From positions 62,001-126,000 of IMG/VR virus record IMGVR_UViG_3300046003_007892: 64,000 nucleotides of DNA. One strand, given 5' to 3'. A program made the position numbers and the translations under genes. The notes under the pieces are model-generated. The model did no database searches and had not been told where the DNA came from. It saw nothing but the letters and a program-made list of their open reading frames with translations. The stretch's first letter is position 1; every line of letters starts with the position of its first letter. This document shows positions 2,045 through 61,049 of this stretch, one piece after another.

Positions 2045-2079
2045 AACATAGACGGCTCTGGAAACTTGTCAAGTAAATA
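2045..2079 (-). promoter_or_regulatory. early (host sigma70-type) promoter
   Basis: TATTTAC-TTGACA-N16-TATGTT; same design at 7372-7406 and 8117-8151. Confidence 0.75.
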
Positions 2080-2083
2080 AAAA

Positions 2084-2175
2084 TGGTAGCAGACCAGGGA
2101 ATCGAGCCCTGCACGAACCGAGTATCTCTCGGCTGCTAAAGGTGTATAAATCCTTCGTGGTGCCTCACGCCTGCT
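2084..2175 (-). tRNA. atypical tRNA-like RNA, anticodon UAU (Ile), reduced D-arm, long variable arm
   Basis: acceptor AGCAGGC/GUCUGCU, A73, CCA; T-arm CAGGG-CUCGAUU-CCCUG; AC arm AAGG-A-UUUAUAC-A-CCUU; V-arm AGCCGAG/CUCGGUU. Confidence 0.6.
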
Positions 2176-2184
2176 AAATATTGG

Positions 2185-2715
2185 GTGTTTTATACTGTAT
2201 ACCGGATAACAAATCTGACGAACGGTAAGTTTTATGTGGGTGCTCACCAGACTGAGAACCTACGAGACTCATATATGGGAAGTGGTAGAGCCATCAAAGA
2301 AGCTATTCGTAAGCACGGTATAGATAGTTTCTCCAAAGAAATACTCCATGTGTTTGAAACTTCTGAAGAAATGTTCGCCATGGAGCGGTCCATTATTCAA
2401 GAGTGTCTGGGAGATCGAAACAACTACAATATGGGCGTCGGAGGAGCGGGAGGTTTCACATCTGAGATCGCTCGGCGAGGTGCACTAGCGCAAGCTGAGA
2501 AATACGACCTCGCCTCTAAGTCCGAATGGGGGCGAAAAGGAATTGCCGCGTTCCACGCAAACCCAGAGAATATCTCCAAACTTTCCGAGAATGGAAGGAA
2601 GGGTGGCCGGATGAACAAGGGAAAGAAAAAATCCCCCGAGCACATCCGCGCAATCCAGGAAGCCAAGCTTCGGAAAAAGAATGGTGCGCCCGGCCAGACT
2701 CGAACTGACAACTGA
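2185..2715 (+). CDS. GIY-YIG homing endonuclease (Seg-like)
   Basis: VYRITN..NGKFYVG, YMGSG, E and YN..GG motifs; TAAATA-N4-GTG; antisense inside tRNA operon. Confidence 0.9.
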   Translation: MFYTVYRITNLTNGKFYVGAHQTENLRDSYMGSGRAIKEAIRKHGIDSFSKEILHVFETSEEMFAMERSIIQECLGDRNNYNMGVGGAGGFTSEIARRGALAQAEKYDLASKSEWGRKGIAAFHANPENISKLSENGRKGGRMNKGKKKSPEHIRAIQEAKLRKKNGAPGQTRTDN

Positions 2716-2756
2716 TCACTTATGAGGTGATGGTTCTACCATTGAACTACAGGCGC
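2682..2756 (-). tRNA. tRNA CAU, probably Ile2 (lysidine)
   Basis: cloverleaf, loop CUCAUAA, CCA; G1-C72 (not initiator); C4-G69 and C5-G68 as in TilS substrates. Confidence 0.85.
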
Positions 2757-2757
2757 A

Positions 2758-2833
2758 TGGCATATCCGGCAGGGCTCGAACCTGCAACCGACGACTTAGA
2801 AGGTCGTTGCTCTTCCAATTGAGCTACGGATAC
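2758..2833 (-). tRNA. tRNA-Arg(UCU)
   Basis: canonical cloverleaf, loop CUUCUAA, CCA. Confidence 0.92.
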
Positions 2834-20443: not shown

Positions 20444-20977
20444 ATGAATATTGAACTACTCCAAGAATATATCGAGCAGGGTCTGTCCAGCTATCAGATC
20501 GCGGCCAAGACCAATAAGGCGGCGACGACCGTCCGATACTGGATAAAGAAGCACGGCCTCAGCATTTCAAAGCCTGATAAGCCGGATAACCATTGCGCCC
20601 GGTGCGACACCGTCAAGACCAGAGACGACTTCTACCAATACGACACCAAGCGGAGGACGACCTACTGTAAGCCCTGCATGGCGTCGTGGATGAAAGATCG
20701 CTGTCGGAAGCTCAAGGCCCTGGCGGTGGAATATGCGGGAGGCTGCTGCAAGGGCTGCGGCTACGACAAATATCAGGGTGCTCTAGACTTCCATCACCGG
20801 GACCCGGCGCAGAAGGATTTCTCCATTGCTGCCAACATGCGGCGCGGAGACCTCAGCGAGACCATGAAGGCCGAGATCGATAAGTGTGTTCTCCTTTGTG
20901 CTAACTGCCACCGCGAGGCTCACGGCGGACTACGGGATTGGAAGATGGAGGGCCCTGAGAGAATCGAACTCTCGTGA
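20444..20977 (+). CDS. HNH homing endonuclease with HTH and Zn-finger
   Basis: ALDFHHRDP, LLCANCHREAH; TAAATA-N6-ATG; antisense inside tRNA operon. Confidence 0.9.
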   Translation: MNIELLQEYIEQGLSSYQIAAKTNKAATTVRYWIKKHGLSISKPDKPDNHCARCDTVKTRDDFYQYDTKRRTTYCKPCMASWMKDRCRKLKALAVEYAGGCCKGCGYDKYQGALDFHHRDPAQKDFSIAANMRRGDLSETMKAEIDKCVLLCANCHREAHGGLRDWKMEGPERIELS

Positions 20978-21019
20978 AGTGATTAAAAGTCACCTATTCT
21001 GCCATTGAATTAAGGGCCC
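20946..21019 (-). tRNA. tRNA-Lys(UUU), canonical length
   Basis: loop CUUUUAA, U73, CCA. Confidence 0.9.
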
Positions 21020-21022
21020 ATC

Positions 21023-21116
21023 TGGAGAACGCGGTGGGACTCGAACCCACGGGGTCAGGCTTGCACCTGTTACGGGCTTAAAAGGCCCGGCCTCTCGCCA
21101 CTGAGGTGACGCGTCC
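21023..21116 (-). tRNA. tRNA-Lys(UUU) with long variable arm
   Basis: 94 nt; CGGGC-CUUUUAA-GCCCG; V-arm CAGGU-GCAA-GCCUG; U73, CCA. Confidence 0.8.
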
Positions 21117-21130
21117 GTTCAGAAGAAACT

Positions 21131-21217
21131 TGGAGGATTGGATGGGACTCGAACCCATGATGAGCTTACGCTAGCGGGGTAAGAACCCGCGCCTCTCGCC
21201 GCTGAGGTGACCAATCC
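21131..21217 (-). tRNA. tRNA-Lys(CUU) with long variable arm
   Basis: 87 nt; GCGGG-UUCUUAC-CCCGC; V-arm AGC-GUAA-GCU; U73, CCA. Confidence 0.8.
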
Positions 21218-21235: not shown

Positions 21236-21311
21236 TGGTGAACGCGCTCGGGTTCGAACCGAGGACCAACAGATTAAGAGTCTGTCGCTCTACCAACTGA
21301 GCTACGCGTCC
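21236..21311 (-). tRNA. tRNA-Lys(CUU), canonical
   Basis: loop CUCUUAA, A73, CCA. Confidence 0.93.
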
Positions 21312-40707: not shown

Positions 40708-41427
40708 ATGAGCCAGATGAGCCCATTCAAGCTAACCTTCAACAAGCCCGCCGTTCAATCCTTCTTCGAAGGCGAAGACGCAGATGGCCTGAAGGTTGGA
40801 ATCGAGCAGAACGCCGTGGTCTTCACTCCGGTAAACGGGTCCAAGGACTCGGACGTCATTCCTCTACTTGAGCGAACGCGAGGCGGCGTCGAAGCCGTTG
40901 TCGAGGGCAGGATGGCCGCTCAACTCGCCATGGCTCTGGAGAACCCTCACGGGTCATTCTTCACCCTCAAACGCATGAAGGGCGGCGCCGTTCAGGCAGT
41001 TCCTTACGCCTCCGCTGACGCCCCGTCGAAGTTCACCCCGCATATGCGGGCTTGGCTTCCGAAAACGATGGACACCGAAGGTGCCCCGGCTGTGATGCCA
41101 AACATCGACGAGTTCCCCCGATTCCTCGAAGGTGTGCGGGCCGCCAAGCGGTTGGTCGATGAACACTCCACGGTCAAGCGCGCCGGTCGCCCCTCTCGGG
41201 AAGTCAGCGAGGCCCGTCGTCTCCTGGCCCAGTTCAGCGAACTCTCGCAGGAGATCATCCCCACCGTCTCGAACGACGAAGGTTTGCTCCGGCAGGCTCA
41301 CGAGCTTCTCGGCTCGATAGTTGCGGGGACCGTGACTCCGAAGGCCCACGTGGGTCGCCGACACAAGGCTCCGATCAGGAAGCCGAGCGCGCGGCGTACC
41401 ACGACGGAAGCGCACGCAACGGCGTAG
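40708..41427 (+). CDS. hypothetical protein
   Basis: 239 aa. Confidence 0.7.
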   Translation: MSQMSPFKLTFNKPAVQSFFEGEDADGLKVGIEQNAVVFTPVNGSKDSDVIPLLERTRGGVEAVVEGRMAAQLAMALENPHGSFFTLKRMKGGAVQAVPYASADAPSKFTPHMRAWLPKTMDTEGAPAVMPNIDEFPRFLEGVRAAKRLVDEHSTVKRAGRPSREVSEARRLLAQFSELSQEIIPTVSNDEGLLRQAHELLGSIVAGTVTPKAHVGRRHKAPIRKPSARRTTTEAHATA

Positions 41428-44827: not shown

Positions 44828-44907
44828 CCTGTTAACTCCTCGCACTACTTTCGCGCGTGGGGATAAATACGCCTGTCTATATCCATGCTGGATATCTTGG
44901 GTCTTCG

Positions 44908-46167
44908 ATGTTTTTTGGAAAAAAGAAGCGAGCGGCAGCCGCGAAGGCTGCTCACGATAGCATGGTCCGCGACCTGGACCGTGACCGCAAGCTTGCCGAA
45001 AGCCAACGGGCTCTCCTAAACGCTGCCCTCACGACCGCCGATACCGCCCAGGAAGTCACCGCCAAACTTCGTAGTCGCCTCGACGATATCGTCAACCAGT
45101 TCGATGCCACCTCTCGCCTTCTCAAGGACGCCCTCGTCATCTGCAACATCCTCGGAGAGATCACGGCTTTCAACCCTGCCGCAGAACTCCTGTTCGGTAT
45201 TCCACATGATGACGCAATTGGATTGCCGGTCATGGACCTCTTCCGCAAAGCGCAGGGCAACGAGGAGATCGCCGATCTTGCCAGCCTGTGGATTCTGCTC
45301 AAAAACGAAGACCAGACCGACGTCATTGGCGCCAACGGTGACAAGCGTTTCCCGGTTCAGACAAGCCTATCCATGCTGGACCGCCACGATGGCTCCTCGG
45401 TCATCCTCCTGCTCGTTCAGGACCAGAGCACTGCCGTCATGGCCAGTCGCAGCGAGCGCAAATACGATTCCCTGTTCGCTTCCAGCTTCGACGGCGTCCT
45501 GGTCGTCTACAAGGGTCGTATCGTGGCCGCCAACCCGGCAACGACGCGCCTGTTCGGATATCCCACGGAGCAGCTTTTGAACGAGCCACTGTTCATGCTC
45601 GTCCACGCCAGACACGCTAACCGGCTTCTCACCTCCAGGCTCCTCCCAGACGGTATGAAATCACCTTCGCAGAACTTCATCATCGAAGGGGTGCACAGCA
45701 GCACCCGGACCTTGAGTCTGATGTTCGCCACCACCCCCATTGAATGGGACAACGCGACGGCACTCCTCATCACAATCAAGGACGTGACGGAACTCCAGCG
45801 TCTGGAAACAGTGTTGGGCGTGAAGAGTTCCAACGGCGAAATGATCGTTTGTTTCGGAACCGATTATATCGTCACCTTTGCAAACAAGATGTTCATGGAT
45901 GTCCACGGGCCCGTGGCAATAGGCTGCGATATTCGCGTCATCCTGGCGCCGGACCAAATGGAGGTCTTTGAAGCCAACACGAAAAAACTCTCATCCGAGA
46001 ACTCGTCAGTGCGATCTCATACCCGCCATGTCCGGGATGATGGGACGGTATACTTCCAGGACTGGATTGATAATGCCGTGTTTGACCAATGCGGTAGTCC
46101 AATCGAATATCAACGAATTGGACGAACGATCAGCGATGCCCTTTCGAGCGCGATCAGAGACGATTGA
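44908..46167 (+). CDS. multi-PAS domain protein without output domain
   Basis: PAS-type FNPAAELLFG, ANPATTRLFGY, ANKMFMDVHG. Confidence 0.8.
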   Translation: MFFGKKKRAAAAKAAHDSMVRDLDRDRKLAESQRALLNAALTTADTAQEVTAKLRSRLDDIVNQFDATSRLLKDALVICNILGEITAFNPAAELLFGIPHDDAIGLPVMDLFRKAQGNEEIADLASLWILLKNEDQTDVIGANGDKRFPVQTSLSMLDRHDGSSVILLLVQDQSTAVMASRSERKYDSLFASSFDGVLVVYKGRIVAANPATTRLFGYPTEQLLNEPLFMLVHARHANRLLTSRLLPDGMKSPSQNFIIEGVHSSTRTLSLMFATTPIEWDNATALLITIKDVTELQRLETVLGVKSSNGEMIVCFGTDYIVTFANKMFMDVHGPVAIGCDIRVILAPDQMEVFEANTKKLSSENSSVRSHTRHVRDDGTVYFQDWIDNAVFDQCGSPIEYQRIGRTISDALSSAIRDD

Positions 46168-54349: not shown

Positions 54350-55909
54350 GTGGGACGTAATCCGCTAACGAAGACCTTCGACCACCAAACCGAAGAGACT
54401 TCCATCTATCAGGCCTGGGAAACCAGTGGCGCCTTCAAGCCATCAGGCAAAGGGGAACCCTATTTCCTCCCCATGCCCCCGCCGAACATCACCGGCATTC
54501 TGCATATGGGCCACGCCCTGTTTGCAACCCTTCAGGACATCAGCACGCGATTCAACCGGATGCGGGGGCGCAATACCCTCTGGCTGCCGGGGACCGATCA
54601 CGCCGGGTTGGCCACGCAAGCCAAGCTGGACGAACTCATGATCGCTCAGGGGCTCGACCCGCAGGGACCGGAGTTCGACGCGTTCGCTGCCGACTACAAG
54701 GCCAACCTGAAGAGCACCATCACGGGTCAGCTTCGCCGTTGTGGCGCGTCTGCTGACTGGTCCAGAGAGACCTTCACGCTCGACGACGATTACAGCGCAG
54801 CCGTCATCGCCGCCATGGAGAAATGCCATGAGGCCGGGATGCTCTACCAGCGGGACGGCCAGTGGTGGCTCGACATGGAACCATTGGCGGCTGAACTCCT
54901 GTCCGAGATGGACGCGGGGAGCCTGGAGATCATTCCCTCGGGCGGTGAAGGCACGCTGCGCAACTTCCTGACCAAGATCGAGCCGTGGTGCATCAGCCGT
55001 CAAATCCGCTGGGGTCATCGTTTGCCGATCTGGAAACGGAACGGCATTCGCTCCGGCATCCAGCGCATCAACGAGTTCACGATCAGCGCGACCTGTCCGG
55101 GAGACCCCCAGGATTGGACGCAGGAAGAAGGATGTCTGGATACGTGGTTCTCTTCGGCCCTCTGGCCGTTCGCCACGCTGGGTTGGCCCAAAGACACTCC
55201 CGACATGCGGACCTTCTACCCGGCCGCCATGATCGAGACCGCCGACGACATCCTGTTCTTCTGGTGCGCCCGCATGCTCATGATGGGGCTCCTCCTGACT
55301 GACCAGATGGCCTTCAAGACAATCTTCCTGCACGGTCTCATCCGGGACAAGGACGGGCGCAAGATGGCCAAGTCCATCGGCAACGGCATCGACCCCCTAG
55401 ATATCATCGAGAAGTTCGGCTGCGACGCCATGCGGTTCGCTCTGGCCGAAGATGCCACGCCGGGCCAGGACATGCGGATGTGGGATGAAAAGTTCCAAGC
55501 CGCGAAGGGACTGCGGACCAAAATCTGGAACGCATCCCGGTATGCGATCTCGCACTGGGACCGCATCGGCCACGGTCGTCTCGCATTCCCGTCCCAGCAT
55601 CCCGATGACATCGCCATCCGGGCCCGGCTAGACGAAACCATCCAGGAAATGACTGCCATGCTAGAGGGGCTTCGCTACCACGAGGCCGCCTTCACCATTC
55701 GGCAGTTCATCTTCAATGACCTGTGCGGGACCTACATCGAGCAGACCAAGTCTCGGCTCTACGATGAGAATGACATGGCGGCCAACGCGACCCTCATGGA
55801 AACCCTCCATCAGACCCTACGTCTCCTCCACCCGTTCATGCCTTACGTCACGGAGAGGATTCGGGCAGCCTACTCGCCAGACCCCTTGATCACGACCGAC
55901 TGGGTGTAG
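54350..55909 (+). CDS. valS: valyl-tRNA synthetase, minimal (no CP1 editing domain)
   Basis: PPPNITGILHMGH, WCISRQ, LDTWFSS, KMAKS; 519 aa. Confidence 0.85.
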   Translation: MGRNPLTKTFDHQTEETSIYQAWETSGAFKPSGKGEPYFLPMPPPNITGILHMGHALFATLQDISTRFNRMRGRNTLWLPGTDHAGLATQAKLDELMIAQGLDPQGPEFDAFAADYKANLKSTITGQLRRCGASADWSRETFTLDDDYSAAVIAAMEKCHEAGMLYQRDGQWWLDMEPLAAELLSEMDAGSLEIIPSGGEGTLRNFLTKIEPWCISRQIRWGHRLPIWKRNGIRSGIQRINEFTISATCPGDPQDWTQEEGCLDTWFSSALWPFATLGWPKDTPDMRTFYPAAMIETADDILFFWCARMLMMGLLLTDQMAFKTIFLHGLIRDKDGRKMAKSIGNGIDPLDIIEKFGCDAMRFALAEDATPGQDMRMWDEKFQAAKGLRTKIWNASRYAISHWDRIGHGRLAFPSQHPDDIAIRARLDETIQEMTAMLEGLRYHEAAFTIRQFIFNDLCGTYIEQTKSRLYDENDMAANATLMETLHQTLRLLHPFMPYVTERIRAAYSPDPLITTDWV

Positions 55910-56432: not shown

Positions 56433-56719
56433 CGGAGATGCTCCATCACGGTCGCGAGTTCAGGGAGGATGCGGGCCTCGGCGGCATCGTTTTCGGCCCA
56501 GGTCGTCGGATAGGAAACGTATTCAGATAGGCGAATCCGCCATCCGTTTCCTGAAACATTTTTCGGTTCCACGGTGAGGCGCGGTGCGAACAGGTTTGTG
56601 AGACGAGCGGGCGGGCCGTAGCCGGACCATATGTCGTGTGCGCCCTCAAAGCGGGGGGCGTAGTGGGAACAGATGGCCTCTACAGCGGCCACCTCCTCGG
56701 GTGTGGACGGGCGTATCAT
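56429..56719 (-). CDS. hypothetical protein
   Basis: 96 aa, coupled. Confidence 0.6.
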   Translation of the reverse strand: MIRPSTPEEVAAVEAICSHYAPRFEGAHDIWSGYGPPARLTNLFAPRLTVEPKNVSGNGWRIRLSEYVSYPTTWAENDAAEARILPELATVMEHLR

Positions 56720-58068
56720 GCGCTCCTCCAGACCGTTCCCTCGGGCTTGTCTTCTAGTACGACACCCATGCTTTCGATCTTGGCCCTCAAGCGGTCAGCC
56801 TCGGCCCAGTCCTTATTGGCCCGCGCCGAGTTGCGTTCTTGAATGAGTTCCCAAATGTCGAACATCGGCCGGGTGTCGGTCTTGCGTTGACGCCAGCGGG
56901 TCGGGTCGGACTCCAACAAGCCCATCATGTTGGCCGACCGGAGAAGCTTATCGACGCTCTCTTCGCCGCGCGAAACCCGACTGGCCAGATCGTGCAGGGC
57001 CGCCAGTGCACCGGGGGTGTTGAGATCGTCCTGAAGGGCCCCCAGAACGGATTCATCGACGTCCGGGGGTCCGGCGACCTTTCCGTTCAGAACAGCCGTG
57101 TAGAGGCCGTTCAGAGCCTTCTCCGCCTCTTCCATGCGGGCTTCGGTATAGTCGATGGCCGCTCTATAGTGGGTGGAGAGCAGGAAGTAGCGCACGACCT
57201 CGCCGTCGAGATCGCTTTTCATGAGTTCAGCCAAGGTGACGAAGTTGCCCTGGCTCTTCGACATCTTCTTGCCGTCTACGGTCAGCATGCCGTTGTGGAG
57301 CCAGTAGTTGGCCAGCGGCTCACCGTGCGCGCATTCCGACTGCGCGATCTCGTTCTCGTGGTGGGGGAATATGAGATCGGAGCCGCCGCCGTGAATGTCG
57401 ATGGTCGGGCCGAATATGCGGGCGATCATGGCCGAGCATTCGATATGCCAGCCCGGACGTCCCATTCCCCACGGCGAGGTCCAGACAGGCTCACCCGGTT
57501 CCTTGCCGGGTTTCCACAAGACGAAGTCGGCGGGGTCGCGCTTGTATGAGCCGGGCTCGACGCGGGCCCCGGCTTGGAGGCCGAGAAGGTTTTGTTTGGA
57601 GAGCTTGCCGTGTTGGGCGTGGCTCTTCACCGAGAAGAGAACGTGCCCATCCGCCACGTAGGCGTGACCCTTGTCGATCAGCGTGGTGATCATCTCGATC
57701 ATGACGCCGATATGCGTGGTCGCTCGGGGGTTCAAAGTTGGGTCGAGGTTCCCCAGCATCCGCATCACCGAATGGTAGACCTGGATGGTCTCATTGGTGA
57801 GTTCACTGATGCTGATGTTGCGCTCTTTTGCGCGCTCGATGATCTTGTCGTCGATGTCCGTGTAGTTGCGCGCGAAGAAGACGCTGTCCTCCCCATAGGT
57901 GTGGCGAAGGAGACGGAACAGGATATCGAACGCGGCGGCGGGGCGACCATTTCCCAGGTGGGGGTGGTCATAAACCGTGGGGCCGCACTGGTACACGGTC
58001 ACCCGGTTGGGGTGCAGGGGAGTGAACTCGCGTTTCTCTCCCGTCATCGTGTCGTGCAGCTTGATCAT
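56716..58068 (-). CDS. cysS: cysteinyl-tRNA synthetase
   Basis: YQCGPTVY, HLGN, GRPGWHIECS, FPHHENE, KMSKS, anticodon-binding helix. Confidence 0.95.
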   Translation of the reverse strand: MIKLHDTMTGEKREFTPLHPNRVTVYQCGPTVYDHPHLGNGRPAAAFDILFRLLRHTYGEDSVFFARNYTDIDDKIIERAKERNISISELTNETIQVYHSVMRMLGNLDPTLNPRATTHIGVMIEMITTLIDKGHAYVADGHVLFSVKSHAQHGKLSKQNLLGLQAGARVEPGSYKRDPADFVLWKPGKEPGEPVWTSPWGMGRPGWHIECSAMIARIFGPTIDIHGGGSDLIFPHHENEIAQSECAHGEPLANYWLHNGMLTVDGKKMSKSQGNFVTLAELMKSDLDGEVVRYFLLSTHYRAAIDYTEARMEEAEKALNGLYTAVLNGKVAGPPDVDESVLGALQDDLNTPGALAALHDLASRVSRGEESVDKLLRSANMMGLLESDPTRWRQRKTDTRPMFDIWELIQERNSARANKDWAEADRLRAKIESMGVVLEDKPEGTVWRSA

Positions 58069-58248
58069 CTGATCTCCAAAATACGGGTGGCCCCGGACAA
58101 CTCGACCACCCGCCGCATACTTTAATACACCCGTTGCCGCGTTGCCGCGCAGCATCCCGACCCAGCATTGAGCCGAAGACCCGGCGACGGGGCTCATTTT
58201 CACGTCCCCGTACCTTCCCACTATCATGGGAACTATTTTTTGCAAAGC

Positions 58249-58283
58249 AAAAGGGCCGGACTGGTTTCCCAATCCGACCCTTT
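58249..58283 (-). terminator. intrinsic terminator
   Basis: GGGTCGGATTGG-GAAA-CCAGTCCGGCCC-TTTT. Confidence 0.8.
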
Positions 58284-58305: not shown

Positions 58306-59589
58306 TTACTTGGTTTTCTCTTCGTAATAGCAGGTGAGGCCGAACGGAGCCTCGATGCCTTGCGTTGCCGCGTGTCCGTGGATGACGAACAGGGTATCGA
58401 CGTAGTTCTCGTCGCCGGGCGGGCACCAGTGACCGCAGGGATAGCCGTCCGTGAAGAAGACCATCCGTTCGGGCTCGATGCCCTCCTTCTTCATGAACTC
58501 CCAGTTGCACTCGAACATGGTGCCGCCGCGACCCTGCATGGGGTACTCGTCGATCTCGTCCAGGTTGGCGCCCGTGAACTCCTTCAGACCGTAGGTCTGG
58601 GTGTCGAAGGTCCAGACGAGCAGCTTGAAGTCCCGGAAGGTCTCCATGATGCCCTTGATCTCCGACAGGATGTCACGGAGCATTTCCTCGCTCATCGACC
58701 CCGAGGTGTCGATCACGCAGGCGATGTCGATGGTGTCCATGTAGTTCTGGCCGGGCAGCATGAACTGCGGGCGGCCAACCTTGCCGGTCTTCTCGTCGAG
58801 AATGCCGGTGGCCCACGTCCGACGCGACGGACGTTCGAAGGTGTAGTCGTCCTTCATGGTCGAGCGGAAGTGCGCGTCCAGAAGGGTGCGCCAGTCCAGC
58901 TTGGGCTCGACCAGTTCGTCGATCATCTGACGAACGGCGGCCGGAACGTTGCCCGCACCGGCACCCTGCGCGGCCTGAATGGTCGCCGCACGGACTTCGT
59001 TGCGGATGTTCTGGAGGTCGCGCTCGGTCAGAGACGGCGGGCCGTTCTTGCCGATCACGTTGACGTCGGTGCCGCCTTGGCCGCCACCTTCGCCGTCGCC
59101 GTCCTCGTCGGCCTCGCCGTCGAAGTCGAGGTGCTCGTCCATCGACATCTTCATCGGCGTGTTGTTCTGCTGGAGCATGTCGTAGATTTCGTAGGCGGAC
59201 AGTTCGTCCGTATACGTTTGCTCGTGCAGAATGTTCTCGGACGGCGGAACGCCAACCTTCTCCTGGATGAGGATGTAGTTGACGCTGTAGTCGATGGCCA
59301 TGCCCCACAGTTGCTTGTCGCGGTGACCGCGACGTCCCAGGTGGTCGAGGACGCAGTGCAGGACTTCGTGACCCAGAACGAACAGGAGTTCGGGCAGGCT
59401 CAGGCTCTTGATGAAATCGCGGTTGTAGTAGAGACGGCGACCATCGGTAGTGATCGAGCGGCACCAGTCGGTGGCGTCAACCAGCGTCAGGCGCGTAGCC
59501 AGATTCCCGAAGAACGGCTTCGAGAACAGGAGCTTCACGCGAGCAGCGGTGATCGCTTGAACTACCGGGTCTGAAAGATCGTATGACAT
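58306..59589 (-). CDS. metallopeptidase plus vWA domain protein (MoxR partner)
   Basis: HEVLH; IDTSGSMS; FTDG. Confidence 0.85.
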   Translation of the reverse strand: MSYDLSDPVVQAITAARVKLLFSKPFFGNLATRLTLVDATDWCRSITTDGRRLYYNRDFIKSLSLPELLFVLGHEVLHCVLDHLGRRGHRDKQLWGMAIDYSVNYILIQEKVGVPPSENILHEQTYTDELSAYEIYDMLQQNNTPMKMSMDEHLDFDGEADEDGDGEGGGQGGTDVNVIGKNGPPSLTERDLQNIRNEVRAATIQAAQGAGAGNVPAAVRQMIDELVEPKLDWRTLLDAHFRSTMKDDYTFERPSRRTWATGILDEKTGKVGRPQFMLPGQNYMDTIDIACVIDTSGSMSEEMLRDILSEIKGIMETFRDFKLLVWTFDTQTYGLKEFTGANLDEIDEYPMQGRGGTMFECNWEFMKKEGIEPERMVFFTDGYPCGHWCPPGDENYVDTLFVIHGHAATQGIEAPFGLTCYYEEKTK

Positions 59590-59648
59590 TGGACCTCGGG
59601 AAAGGGAGAAAATAGTGGGGGCGGATTCTTAGGCCCGCCCCCTGCGGA

Positions 59649-61049
59649 TTACGAGACGATCAGTCCCTTGAACTTGTCGGCGAAGGCGTCGAACGTCTTC
59701 ATCCGGCTCGTGTCGAAGGGCAGGCGGTGGACCGACAGCGCGGCCTTGGCGCCCATGATGGCGATCTCGGCCTGGAAGTTGTCCATGATGAAGGCCAGGA
59801 AGTTGTCGGCCGAGGCCAGCCACTTCGTGTACTCCTCCTTGGCCGACTCCGCCTTCTTGAAGTTCTCGCCGTGGTGACGCTTGATGTCCTCGATCTGGTC
59901 CTTCAGGCGGTAGCAGAGCGTGGTGGTCAGGGCGTAGGCCAGTTGGACCTCGACCTTTTCCATCTTCTTCAGCTTGCCGGAGAGGATTTGATCGGCGTCC
60001 GGCAGCTTGGACGCGATCTTGCGGAACTCGTTGAACTGGACGCCCGAGCCGTCGCCGACGCAGCCGATGACCAGAGCGGTCAGGATGAACTCGCCCGCCG
60101 TGGGGTTGTTCTCCAGGATTTCGGACACGAAGGTCCACGAGCGCGGGGTCTGGAAGCCACGGGCCGCCGAACCGGGGTCGAACTTGTGGAGTTGGTCCTT
60201 GAAGGCCGAGATGTAGCCGACGACTTCCGGGTGCACCATGGCGCCCAGAGCCCAGGTAATCCACTCGTCGGCGTCGGACTGGAGTTCGACGTGAACGAAG
60301 CGGTTGGCGATGGGGGTCGGCATCTTGAAGGTGACGCCCTTGTCGGTGTCCCGGTTGCCCATGGCGAGCATCAGGACGTCCTTCGGCACCTCGTATTCGC
60401 CCTGACGGCGGTCGAGGATAAGCTGGTAGGCGGCGGCCTGCACGGACGGCGGAGCGGAGTTGAACTCCTCGAAGCCCAGAACGGCCTTGGTCAGACCGGT
60501 GACGCGGTAGCGGACCTGACCGGCGACCGGGGCGCCGCTGGCGTCCTTCAGGATGACCGTGAAGCGGTCCTGAGCGACGGCGACCGACGAATCCGAGGCC
60601 TCGCCGCGAACGACGGTGACGATCTCGGCGGTGTGTTCGGGGTTGATCGCATCGACCGTGATCTTCGGGTCGGTGCAGTAGGCGATGCCGTTGATGCCGG
60701 TCGGGTTGTAGAACCGGACGTTGCGCTCACAGGCGTCGATTTCGATGACGTTGTCTTCGTCGAGGTTGCGCGGCAGGACCAGCGGGGCTGACCAGCGGAC
60801 GCCGTTGACTGAGCCTTCGACGACCGGATACGGGATGCCGCGCAGATCGGTCGGGTCCATCTGGGACAGGCGGACGTCGATGAAGGCGCGGCCCATTGAG
60901 GTGGCGACTTGCTGCGAAATCTGGGACTTCGCGATACCGGGGGGACCCCAGATGAAGGTGGAGAGTTGCGTGTTGGACATCGCAGCCAGAGCCAGAACAA
61001 GCTCTGACGGCTTCAGGACCATCACGGTGGGGTTGTCTTTCTTCGCCAT
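59649..61049 (-). CDS. MoxR-family AAA+ ATPase with internal insert
   Basis: GPPGIAKS, DVRLSQ..DLRG, EEFN, GNR, NRF. Confidence 0.85.
   Translation of the reverse strand: MAKKDNPTVMVLKPSELVLALAAMSNTQLSTFIWGPPGIAKSQISQQVATSMGRAFIDVRLSQMDPTDLRGIPYPVVEGSVNGVRWSAPLVLPRNLDEDNVIEIDACERNVRFYNPTGINGIAYCTDPKITVDAINPEHTAEIVTVVRGEASDSSVAVAQDRFTVILKDASGAPVAGQVRYRVTGLTKAVLGFEEFNSAPPSVQAAAYQLILDRRQGEYEVPKDVLMLAMGNRDTDKGVTFKMPTPIANRFVHVELQSDADEWITWALGAMVHPEVVGYISAFKDQLHKFDPGSAARGFQTPRSWTFVSEILENNPTAGEFILTALVIGCVGDGSGVQFNEFRKIASKLPDADQILSGKLKKMEKVEVQLAYALTTTLCYRLKDQIEDIKRHHGENFKKAESAKEEYTKWLASADNFLAFIMDNFQAEIAIMGAKAALSVHRLPFDTSRMKTFDAFADKFKGLIVS

What the first reader, a model, noticed from the sequence alone, without database searches (positions are those of the whole stretch)
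2084..2175. tRNA-like RNA with UAU anticodon, shrunken D-arm, long V-arm and altered T-loop
Seen: full acceptor stem and CCA; only 12 nt between acceptor and anticodon stems (GUG-AGGCAC-CAC); A-A mismatch above the UUUAUAC loop; 7-bp V-arm; T-loop CUCGAUU. CACG can also pair with CGUG to form a three-way junction. Established: bacteria usually read AUA via TilS-modified CAU, and UAU tRNAs are rare. Inference: a TilS-independent AUA reader or a decoy that standard scanners may miss.
Basis: partly seen in the sequence, partly recalled or inferred. Interest (0 to 1): 0.72.

Follow-up and report, generated by a model that had tools for sequence, protein, structure and literature searches.

The report
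Hidden phage tRNA for AUA codons
The flagged sequence is a real but oddly built phage transfer RNA with anticodon UAU: a compact variant of a widespread, barely described phage family annotated tRNA-Ile(UAU), whose extra hairpin carries a second, isoleucine-like "GAU" loop.

Summary
Window 2084-2175 (minus strand) folds into a five-helix, tRNA-like RNA with every stem pair intact, A73 and an encoded CCA. ARAGORN at default settings and Rfam both miss it.

It is not a one-off. Pattern scans found about 18 relatives sharing its 9-nt anticodon loop, and more than 117 viral contigs once positions 31:39 were freed. Nearly all lie in phage tRNA arrays. All five helices covary. A model built only from three other members scores the window copy at 46.7 bits (E about 1e-9).

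Cultured phages carry the family annotated as tRNA-Ile(tat), for example Vibrio phage Thalassa and an Acinetobacter phage. The family hallmark is an extra hairpin in the variable region. Its 7-nt loop, CAGAU(A/U)A, resembles the tRNA-Ile(GAU) anticodon loop CUGAUAA. The window copy belongs to a compact D-arm subgroup of about 11 sequences and uniquely has C54.

Most likely it is a TilS-independent reader of the rare AUA codon (2.6 per 1000 codons here), probably charged with Ile. In Thalassa-like phages AUA exchanges with Ile codons, not Leu codons. Whether the GAU hairpin is an IleRS identity handle is inference. No expression data were found.

The parts
2084..2175 (-). Whole tRNA(UAU) gene, 92 nt, with CCA encoded
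   Evidence: An identical copy lies in a second IMG/VR contig (L006) and in contigs from three of the four lake-metagenome DNA runs laid.
2169..2175 (-). Acceptor stem, 5' strand AGCAGGC. It pairs with 2088-2094 (GUCUGCU): 7 bp with A1-U72 and one G.U.
   Evidence: The acceptor helix covaries at all 7 pairs in the family.
2157..2168 (-). Compact D region GUGAGGCACCAC: 3 Watson-Crick pairs GUG/CAC and a small loop that keeps GG
   Evidence: About 11 other family members have 12-17-nt D regions with a 3-4-bp stem and a 3-4-nt GG loop.
2138..2156 (-). Anticodon arm: stem GAAGG/CCUUU and a 9-nt loop AUUUAUACA (an A31.A39 mismatch around UUUAUAC). The anticodon UAU is at 2148-2146.
   Evidence: The stem covaries. 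31:39 is non-Watson-Crick in about 40% of the family.
2116..2134 (-). Extra (variable-region) hairpin AGCCGAG-AGAUA-CUCGGUU. The loop holds the family motif (N)AGAU(N).
   Evidence: The helix covaries. Loops are CAGAUAA or CAGAUUA in 68 of 89 unique sequences. GAU occurs in only 19% of the variable regions of ordinary Leu/Ser/Tyr tRNAs.
2112..2115 (-). 4-nt spacer CGUG between the extra hairpin and the T stem
   Evidence: this spacer is 5-7 nt in most members and is often AGGUC, a typical class-I variable loop.
2095..2111 (-). T arm CAGGG-CUCGAUU-CCCUG. C54 replaces the usual U54.
   Evidence: All 17 other sequences found with this position left free have U54.
2084..2087 (-). Discriminator A73 and encoded CCA, followed by a U-rich trailer
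   Evidence: A73 is present in 83 of 89 family members and CCA is encoded in 72 of 89.
2045..2072 (-). Sigma-70-like promoter TTGACA-16-TATGTT for the next gene (ORF 2017-1799), starting 12 nt after the tRNA 3' end
   Evidence: a consensus match only.
2185..2715 (+). SegE-like GIY-YIG homing-endonuclease ORF on the opposite strand. It fills the gap between the UAU tRNA and tRNA(CAU).
   Evidence: PF19835 8e-09, PF01541 1e-06.
2682..2756 (-). Upstream neighbour tRNA(CAU), on the same strand. It has C4-G69 and C5-G68, so it may be a tRNA-Ile2-type rather than a tRNA-Met (this rests on my memory of TilS determinants and was not tested).
2758..2833 (-). Upstream neighbour tRNA-Arg(UCU), which reads the rare codon AGA

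Best explanation
This is a genuine tRNA gene of a huge lake-water phage. It is a compact-D-arm variant of a widespread phage family that databases annotate as tRNA-Ile(UAU).

It lies at the end of a small tRNA cluster, in the order Arg-UCU, CAU, then a homing-endonuclease gene on the other strand, then this gene. It has an encoded CCA and a U-rich trailer.

Inferred steps: the RNA is cut out by the host tRNA-processing enzymes, charged (most probably with isoleucine by the host IleRS), and reads the rare codon AUA by U34-A pairing. That would make the phage independent of the host's scarce lysidine-modified tRNA-Ile2 and of TilS.

The family-specific extra hairpin has an invariant GAU in a 7-nt loop (CAGAU(A/U)A, compared with CUGAUAA in tRNA-Ile(GAU)). 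It looks like a retained or duplicated tRNA-Ile(GAU) anticodon arm. I infer that it supplies Ile identity or another recognition handle, because E. coli-type IleRS accepts a UAU anticodon poorly. The frequent 31:39 mismatch and the C38 may tune decoding against AUG.

Shown here: the structure, family membership, covariation, genomic context, codon rarity, and the Ile-like behaviour of AUA in cultured relatives. Inferred: expression, charging identity and the role of the hairpin.
For: - All 27 stem pairs are intact and CCA is encoded.
- Model R1, built from three other members, scores the window copy 46.7 bits (E about 1e-9), against at most 32 bits for ordinary tRNAs.
- On 19 distinct sequences, 95.6% of cells are paired against 61% in shuffles, and 23 of 26 pairs show double changes, in all five helices.
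- RNAalifold predicts the same five helices independently on 44 canonical-D members.
- About 18 relatives share the same 9-nt loop. They lie in phage or metagenome contigs, mostly inside arrays of 8-26 tRNAs.
- More than 117 viral contigs match when positions 31:39 are left free.
- None of the 7 pattern matches in one representative genome for each of 185,579 prokaryote species was a family member by eye.
- Cultured phages annotate the gene as tRNA-Ile(tat): Thalassa 78904-78996, henriette 12B8, Acinetobacter phage qsb1.
- The scaffold searched with a free anticodon returned only UAU members.
- AUA makes up 176 of 66,712 codons, or 4.8% of Ile codons, in this phage. No TilS gene is in the fragment.
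- In Thalassa versus Ceto orthologs, AUA exchanges with AUU/AUC 19 times and with Leu codons 9 times, whereas UUA exchanges with CUA 39 times.
- E. coli IleRS charges UAU tRNA poorly, and UAU misreads AUG on E. coli ribosomes (PMC3575796). That gives a rationale for family-specific additions.
- Canonical members have a class-I body: a 4-bp D stem UAGCUCAGUGGUAGAGCA, U12-A23, and an AGGUC spacer.
Against: - There are no expression data. No RNA run was listed.
- The window copy is the most deviant member. It has the shortest D region (12 nt), C54 instead of the otherwise invariant U54, A1-U72, and a 5-nt rather than 7-nt hairpin loop if the closing G-C pair forms.
- A homing endonuclease sits directly upstream.
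- The anticodon loop was fixed by my search patterns, so its conservation is not independent evidence.
- Charging identity is untested. In canonical tRNA geometry a hairpin in the variable region is far from the anticodon-binding domain of IleRS, so the identity-handle idea needs a non-canonical binding mode.
- The codon-exchange test used distant family members. It cannot exclude minor mis-incorporation, because the host tRNA-Ile2 also reads AUA.
Confidence: 0.68

Rival explanations
1. It is a decaying pseudogene of that tRNA family, damaged around the time the GIY-YIG endonuclease gene was inserted, and no longer functional.
For: It has C54 where all 17 other sequences have U54. It has the shortest D region in the family. 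ARAGORN and Rfam miss it. A homing-endonuclease ORF starts 10 nt upstream of it.
Against: No stem pair is broken in any of the five helices, and A73, CCA, GG, U33, A37 and the AGAU motif are all kept. Compact D arms are shared by about 11 other members, with compensatory changes. The sequence is identical in contigs from three lake-metagenome runs and in a second IMG/VR contig.
Confidence: 0.13
2. It is a class-II-like tRNA charged by LeuRS (or SerRS/TyrRS) because of its long arm and A73. It would then insert a non-Ile residue at AUA, as the nematode nev-tRNA-Ile(UAU) does.
For: It has A73 plus a long extra arm. The nematode nev-tRNA(UAU) is leucylated (PMC3333845). One weak outlier, L058, has a tRNA-Leu-like D arm and sits among Leu tRNAs.
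Against: Canonical family members have a class-I body with a 4-bp D stem and an AGGUC spacer, not a Leu/Ser/Tyr body. G73, which SerRS needs, is absent. AUA exchanges with Ile codons, not Leu codons, in phages that carry the family. Phages as small as 54 kb carry the gene, so host enzymes must serve it.
Confidence: 0.06
3. It is a non-translational tRNA mimic: a decoy or regulator for host tRNA-targeting nucleases, toxins or synthetases. This was suggested for the allo-tRNA(UAU) species of Acidobacteria.
For: Allo-tRNA(UAU) variants were inactive in translation and lie near toxin-antitoxin or transposon loci (PMC5389517). Phage tRNAs are known to counter anticodon nucleases (titles and abstracts listed). 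This copy has an atypical core.
Against: The family keeps all translation-relevant features: a 7/5 acceptor-T branch, U33, A37, GG, the T loop, A73 and CCA. It sits in ordinary tRNA arrays. Its anticodon matches a rare codon that the phages actually use. No nuclease that targets tRNA-Ile is known to me, and no defence-related gene was identified next to it.
Confidence: 0.1
4. It is a chance fold in an intergenic spacer.
For: The single-sequence fold gives only z = -1.95.
Against: The family model gives E about 1e-9, the extra-hairpin motif is shared, and the sequence sits in a tRNA cluster.
Confidence: 0.01

Closest known systems
Phage tRNA-Ile(tat) genes as annotated in GenBank, e.g. Vibrio phage Thalassa THALASSA_120 (93 nt), Vibrio phage henriette 12B8, Acinetobacter phage vB_AbaS_qsb1
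   Same: UUUAUAC anticodon loop, an extra hairpin with a CAGAU(A/U)A-type loop in the variable region, A73, encoded CCA, and a position inside phage tRNA clusters.
   Different: Those genes have a canonical 4-bp D arm with a normal loop and U54, and scanners find them. The window copy has a 12-nt D region, C54, an A.A 31:39 pair and a longer (7-bp) extra stem, and scanners miss it.
Bacterial class-I tRNA-Ile(UAU) (Mycoplasma mobile, Lactobacillus plantarum, the B. subtilis tilS-deletion suppressor)
   Same: An unmodified-type UAU anticodon used to read AUA without lysidine (PMC3575796, PMC3919564).
   Different: Those are ordinary 76-77-nt tRNAs. They rely on an adapted IleRS (an Arg in place of Trp905) and, in M. 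mobile, on an adapted ribosome. The phage family adds a hairpin and must work with whatever host enzymes it meets.
Nematode nev-tRNA-Ile(UAU)
   Same: A long extra arm combined with a UAU anticodon and A73, matching a rare codon (PMC3333845).
   Different: The nev-tRNAs derive from tRNA-Leu, are charged with Leu and are eukaryotic. The phage family has a class-I body, and AUA behaves as Ile in its carriers.
allo-tRNA(UAU) of Acidobacteria (Mukai et al. 2017)
   Same: A long extra arm, a UAU anticodon, a compact D stem with a small loop, and possible five-stem junctions (PMC5389517).
   Different: Allo-tRNAs have an 8/4 or 9/3 acceptor/T branch and mostly G73 or U73, are found in bacterial genomes near toxin-antitoxin loci, and were inactive in translation tests. 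This RNA is 7/5 with A73 and lies in a phage tRNA array.
T4 SegB-type arrangement (a GIY-YIG homing endonuclease inside a phage tRNA cluster)
   Same: A Seg-like GIY-YIG gene is embedded between tRNA genes (the T4 SegB context is from my own knowledge and from the abstract of PMC13096335).
   Different: This concerns only the neighbouring gene. It says nothing about the function of the tRNA.

Membership tests
Canonical tRNA (Rfam RF00005 / ARAGORN) | A hit to the curated covariance model at or above the gathering score, or an ARAGORN call at default settings | tested here: not met
   No RF00005 hit even at E <= 10. ARAGORN at default settings is silent. It appears only at -ps80, among 323 calls (24 at default settings).
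Canonical tRNA (Rfam RF00005 / ARAGORN) | A 7-bp acceptor stem plus a 5-bp T stem, a discriminator base, CCA, U33, a purine at 37, G53-C61, C56 and A58 | tested here: met
   All are read directly from the sequence. A general model built from 44 long-arm tRNAs scores it 40.9 bits, within the range of the true tRNAs in the window.
Canonical tRNA (Rfam RF00005 / ARAGORN) | A standard D arm (U8, a 3-4-bp stem, a 7-11-nt loop with G18G19) and U54 | tested here: not met
   The D region is only 12 nt and there is no U8 (position 8 is G). GG is kept. The T loop starts with C54.
Phage tRNA-Ile(UAU) family with an extra hairpin | A UAU anticodon in a UUUAUAC loop | tested here: met
   Window 2149-2143. 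This feature was imposed by the search patterns, so it defines the family as searched rather than testing it.
Phage tRNA-Ile(UAU) family with an extra hairpin | A hairpin in the variable region whose loop carries (A/U)GAU | tested here: met
   The loop is AGAUA, at 2127-2123. The first scans did not impose this motif, yet 17 of 18 sequences have it. Only 10-19% of ordinary class-II tRNA variable regions have it.
Phage tRNA-Ile(UAU) family with an extra hairpin | A significant score against a family covariance model built without the query | tested here: met
   R1 gives 46.7 bits, E 1e-9 to 3.5e-12. Part of the score comes from the shared 13-nt anticodon-loop string that was used to find the model's sequences.
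Phage tRNA-Ile(UAU) family with an extra hairpin | A73 and a location in a phage tRNA cluster | tested here: met
   A73 is at 2087. tRNA(CAU) and tRNA-Arg(UCU) lie upstream on the same strand. The record is an IMG/VR virus.
Phage tRNA-Ile(UAU) family with an extra hairpin | Accepts isoleucine and decodes AUA | not testable with these tools
   Support is indirect only: the annotation in GenBank records and the Ile-like codon exchanges of AUA in Thalassa versus Ceto.
allo-tRNA (Mukai 2017) | An 8/4 or 9/3 acceptor/T branch | tested here: not met
   An 8th acceptor pair would be G.G and the T stem is a full 5 bp, so the branch is 7/5. The definition is from PMC5389517.
allo-tRNA (Mukai 2017) | A G73 or U73 discriminator (Ser identity) and a Sec-like long D stem with a tetraloop | tested here: not met
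   The discriminator is A73. The D stem has 3 (at most 4) pairs.
nev-tRNA / tRNA-Leu-derived class II | A tRNA-Leu-type body and V-arm tip, with leucylation | tested here: inconclusive
   Family members with normal D arms have class-I bodies, and AUA is not Leu-like in carriers. The window copy's own reduced core cannot be classified, and charging was not tested.

The most novel reading that the evidence does not exclude
The extra hairpin is a duplicated tRNA-Ile(GAU) anticodon arm kept as a surrogate identity element, or as the second head of a two-conformation tRNA. The host IleRS normally rejects U34. In this reading it is recruited through the GAU(A/U)A loop while the UAU arm does the decoding. 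That would give phages a portable, TilS-independent AUA decoder that works in any host. The compact-D-arm subgroup, including this copy, would show that the tRNA core has been remodelled around this five-helix design.
Probability: 0.25. Interest if true: 0.85.

Novelty: new variant of a known kind. Interest (0 to 1): 0.6.

Why it matters
Decoding AUA is a classic weak point of the bacterial genetic code. It normally needs lysidine made by the essential enzyme TilS, and E. coli-type IleRS and ribosomes handle a plain UAU anticodon badly.

This finding shows that many phages, from 54-kb Acinetobacter phages to a huge lake phage, carry a dedicated UAU tRNA of unusual five-helix design, with a conserved GAU loop in the extra arm. 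I found no paper describing this architecture.

It matters in three ways. It gives a concrete, testable hypothesis for how a virus installs a host-independent AUA reader. It flags a compact subgroup that current tRNA finders miss, so tRNA counts for phages are underestimates. It also offers a natural scaffold for engineering sense-codon reassignment at AUA.

Tried and rejected
- **Standard scanners.** ARAGORN at default settings and Rfam at gathering score and at E <= 10 gave no hit.
- **Protein-anchored search for related phages.** Two flanking ORFs found only a 100%-identical second contig of the same phage, so no orthologous locus was available for direct comparison.
- **BLAST of the candidate against cultured phages.** Nothing useful. 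A canonical family member had to be used as the query instead.
- **Bacterial genomes.** The pattern scan returned 7 hits and none was a family member by eye.
- **Expression.** No RNA run was listed.
- **DNA runs.** They showed the identical sequence, with no variants and no endonuclease-free form.
- **8/4 (allo-tRNA) and 8/5 readings.** Rejected, because the extra pair would be G.G or is not conserved.
Not conserved in the relatives.
- **Link to the phage's own synthetases.** The only class-Ia enzyme is a ValRS-like protein without an editing domain. None of the four aaRS genes has a homologue in the flanks of other family loci. I therefore propose no link.
- **AUA identity from CysRS alignments.** The two AUA positions fall in variable columns and are uninformative.
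- **IleRS-RNA complex prediction.** The tool did not fold the job, so it provides no evidence.
- **Model R2 from canonical members.** It behaves as a general tRNA model and does not separate the family from other tRNAs.

Full report
**Source and observation.** The window is bases 62001-126000 of a 240,363-bp IMG/VR virus record. CheckV rates it 45% complete, so the phage is huge; its GC content is about 58%. DNA runs place it in lake water. On the minus strand, 2175-2084 reads AGCAGGC / GUGAGGCACCAC / GAAGG-AUUUAUACA-CCUUU / AGC / AGCCGAG-AGAUA-CUCGGUU / CGUG / CAGGG-CUCGAUU-CCCUG / GUCUGCU / A / CCA. RNAfold returns the same cloverleaf with an extra arm (-31.4 kcal/mol, z = -1.95). ARAGORN at default settings, Rfam at gathering score and Rfam at E <= 10 do not report it. 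ARAGORN at -ps80 reports exactly these ends, but among 323 calls against 24 at default settings.

**It is not a one-off.**
- A degenerate pattern (its anticodon stem-loop, a gap, then a T loop) found two unrelated viral contigs besides a 100%-identical copy of the same phage.
- A similar pattern (its anticodon loop with its closing base pair, a gap, then a T loop) run on metagenome contigs raised the set to about 18 distinct sequences. Each has a 7-bp acceptor stem, a 5-bp anticodon stem, a long extra arm and a 5-bp T stem.
- Most of them lie inside arrays of 8-26 tRNA genes. ARAGORN calls about half of them tRNA-Ile(tat).
- The same scan over one genome for each of 185,579 prokaryote species gave only 7 matches, none of which looked like a family member.

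**Covariation.** A covariance model built from three members only (L072, L004, L091) scores the window copy at 46.7 bits, E 1e-9 to 3.5e-12, while ordinary tRNAs reach at most 32 bits. On the model-fitted alignment of 19 distinct sequences:
- 95.6% of cells are standard pairs, against 61% in shuffles and 43-49% when partners are slid;
- 23 of 26 pairs have changes on both sides;
- all five helices covary, including the D helix and the extra arm.

**The family is large and already annotated.**
- The 89 unique cloverleaves mostly have an ordinary class-I D arm (UAGCUCAGUGGUAGAGCA).
- A73 is present in 83 of 89 and CCA is encoded in 72 of 89.
- The 1:72 pair is G.U in 35, G-C in 26 and A-U in 14.
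- The 31:39 pair is often not Watson-Crick (A.C 16, A.A 12, C.U 7).
- The extra hairpin has a 3-7-bp stem and a 7-nt loop that reads CAGAUAA (34) or CAGAUUA (34). It is followed by 5-7 nt, often AGGUC, before the T stem.
- RNAalifold on 44 of these sequences predicts the five helices on its own, with 20 of 23 pairs showing compensatory changes.
- BLAST with canonical members finds cultured phages in which the gene is annotated tRNA-Ile (Thalassa's note gives the anticodon tat): about 40 Thalassa-like T5-family Vibrio phages, Vibrio phage henriette 12B8 and Acinetobacter phage vB_AbaS_qsb1.
- Seven literature searches found no paper that describes this architecture.

**What is special about the window copy.** It belongs to a subgroup of about 11 distinct sequences whose D region is only 12-17 nt: a 3-4-bp stem and a 3-4-nt loop that keeps GG. 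Its own D region is the shortest, shared with L070, and its register is ambiguous. It is the only one of 18 sequences, found with that position left free, that has C54 instead of U54. All 27 stem pairs are nevertheless intact. A second IMG/VR contig and contigs from three of the four lake-metagenome runs laid carry the identical sequence.

**Context.** Upstream on the same strand lie tRNA-Arg(UCU) and a tRNA(CAU). The 530-nt gap before the UAU tRNA is filled by a SegE-like GIY-YIG homing-endonuclease ORF on the other strand. A sigma-70-like promoter for the next gene follows the U-rich trailer.

AUA is among the rarest sense codons of the phage: 176 of 66,712 codons, 2.6 per 1000, or 4.8% of Ile codons. 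AGA, read by the neighbouring tRNA-Arg(UCU), is similarly rare. No TilS domain is found in the 240-kb fragment.

**Which amino acid?**
- The canonical members have a class-I body with U12-A23 and an AGGUC spacer, not a Leu/Ser/Tyr body.
- I compared 34 orthologs (85% amino-acid identity, 6,152 codons) between Vibrio phages Thalassa and Ceto. AUA exchanges with AUU (10), AUC (9) and GUA (9), but with UUA, CUA and UUG only 4, 3 and 2 times. The truly synonymous pair UUA/CUA exchanges 39 times.
- AUA therefore behaves as an Ile codon in carriers of the family. That argues against a nev-tRNA-like Leu reading (PMC3333845), although the host tRNA-Ile2 also reads AUA.
- Two AUA positions in the phage CysRS fall in variable columns and say nothing.

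**How it may work.** It is established that E. coli-type IleRS (with Trp905) charges a UAU tRNA poorly, and that a UAU anticodon misreads AUG on E. coli ribosomes (PMC3575796). A phage UAU tRNA used in TilS-bearing hosts such as Vibrio and Acinetobacter must overcome both problems.

The family-specific features are the hairpin loop CAGAU(A/U)A and the weakened 31:39 pair with C38. The loop matches the tRNA-Ile(GAU) anticodon loop CUGAUAA at 5 or 6 of 7 positions. It keeps G34-A35-U36(-A37-A38), the main IleRS identity nucleotides by my knowledge of Nureki et al. 1994. It lacks U33 and often lacks a purine at 37, so it is not itself a decoding loop.

The order of elements is D arm, UAU arm, GAU hairpin, AGGUC, T arm. 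That looks like a tandem duplication of the anticodon arm of a tRNA-Ile(GAU). I therefore infer that the hairpin provides Ile identity or another recognition handle. This is inference only: the canonical geometry places the variable region far from the anticodon-binding domain of IleRS, and the complex prediction I requested was not folded by the tool.

GAU occurs in only 19% of the variable regions of 192 ordinary Leu/Ser/Tyr tRNAs from the same loci. A scaffold search with a free anticodon returned only UAU members.

**Comparison with known systems.**
- The RNA works like the class-I tRNA-Ile(UAU) of Mycoplasma mobile and lactobacilli, but it is built differently.
- It fails the defining 8/4 or 9/3 branch and the G73/U73 discriminator of allo-tRNAs.
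- It fails the tRNA-Leu ancestry of nev-tRNAs.
- It is best filed as a compact-D-arm variant of the phage tRNA-Ile(UAU) extra-hairpin family.

**Verdict.**
A decoy role is not excluded.
- It is neither chance nor, most likely, a decayed gene.
- Novelty: a new variant of a known, annotated but undescribed kind.
- Interest: 0.6.

Noticed in passing
window 21023-21116 (-) and 21131-21217 (-): tRNA-Lys(UUU) of 94 nt and tRNA-Lys(CUU) of 87 nt have long extra arms and U73. They sit beside normal-length Lys(UUU) (20946-21019) and Lys(CUU) (21236-21311). The phage therefore keeps paired normal and long versions of the same anticodons.
   Followed up: partly
genome (G000:C1) 40741-40829, 141056-141146, 139655-139730, 139419-139487 (outside the window): The genome has a long-arm tRNA-Asn(GUU) of 89 nt and a long-arm tRNA-Cys(GCA) of 91 nt. 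It also has a CUA (amber-suppressor type) tRNA and a second, weaker 69-nt CUA tRNA-like sequence. TAG still ends 74 of 320 predicted genes.
   Followed up: partly
window 54350-55909 (+): A 519-aa ValRS-like synthetase lacks the CP1 editing domain (about residues 170-333 of T. thermophilus ValRS) and the C-terminal coiled coil. It scores below the ValRS equivalog cut-offs.
   Followed up: partly
window 56716-58272 (-); genome 141497-143596 (+) and 173799-175151 (+): The phage encodes a CysRS with an N-terminal extension of about 68 aa, a class-IIb synthetase (Asp/Asn/Lys type) next to the long tRNA-Cys, and a class-IIa synthetase.
   Followed up: partly
window 2185-2715 (+): A SegE-like GIY-YIG homing-endonuclease ORF is wedged between two tRNA genes. 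Its last 34 nt run antisense through the 3' part of tRNA(CAU). It contains 3 AUA codons, one of them at the conserved Ile of the GIY-YIG motif.
   Followed up: partly
L151 6630-12584 (IMGVR_UViG_3300032254_000001): Another huge-phage contig carries Glu, Thr, Lys, Met, Ile(GAU) and Gln tRNAs of 86-88 nt. Most have a short extra hairpin in the variable region, often with a GAAA loop. Adding an arm to class-I tRNAs thus seems to be a wider phage habit.
   Followed up: no
L208 3042-3133, L211 518-609, L183 8751-8840, L192 7682-7773: These are 90-92-nt tRNA(CAU) genes whose extra hairpin contains GAUAA. They occur in phages that also carry the long UAU tRNA, so they may be a lysidine-type sibling of the same design.
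   Followed up: no
window 58306-61049 (-) and 44857-46167 (+): A DUF2201 metallopeptidase/VWA-like protein lies next to a weak AAA_5 (MoxR-like) ATPase, and a separate protein carries multiple PAS domains. Both are unusual cargo for a phage.
   Followed up: no
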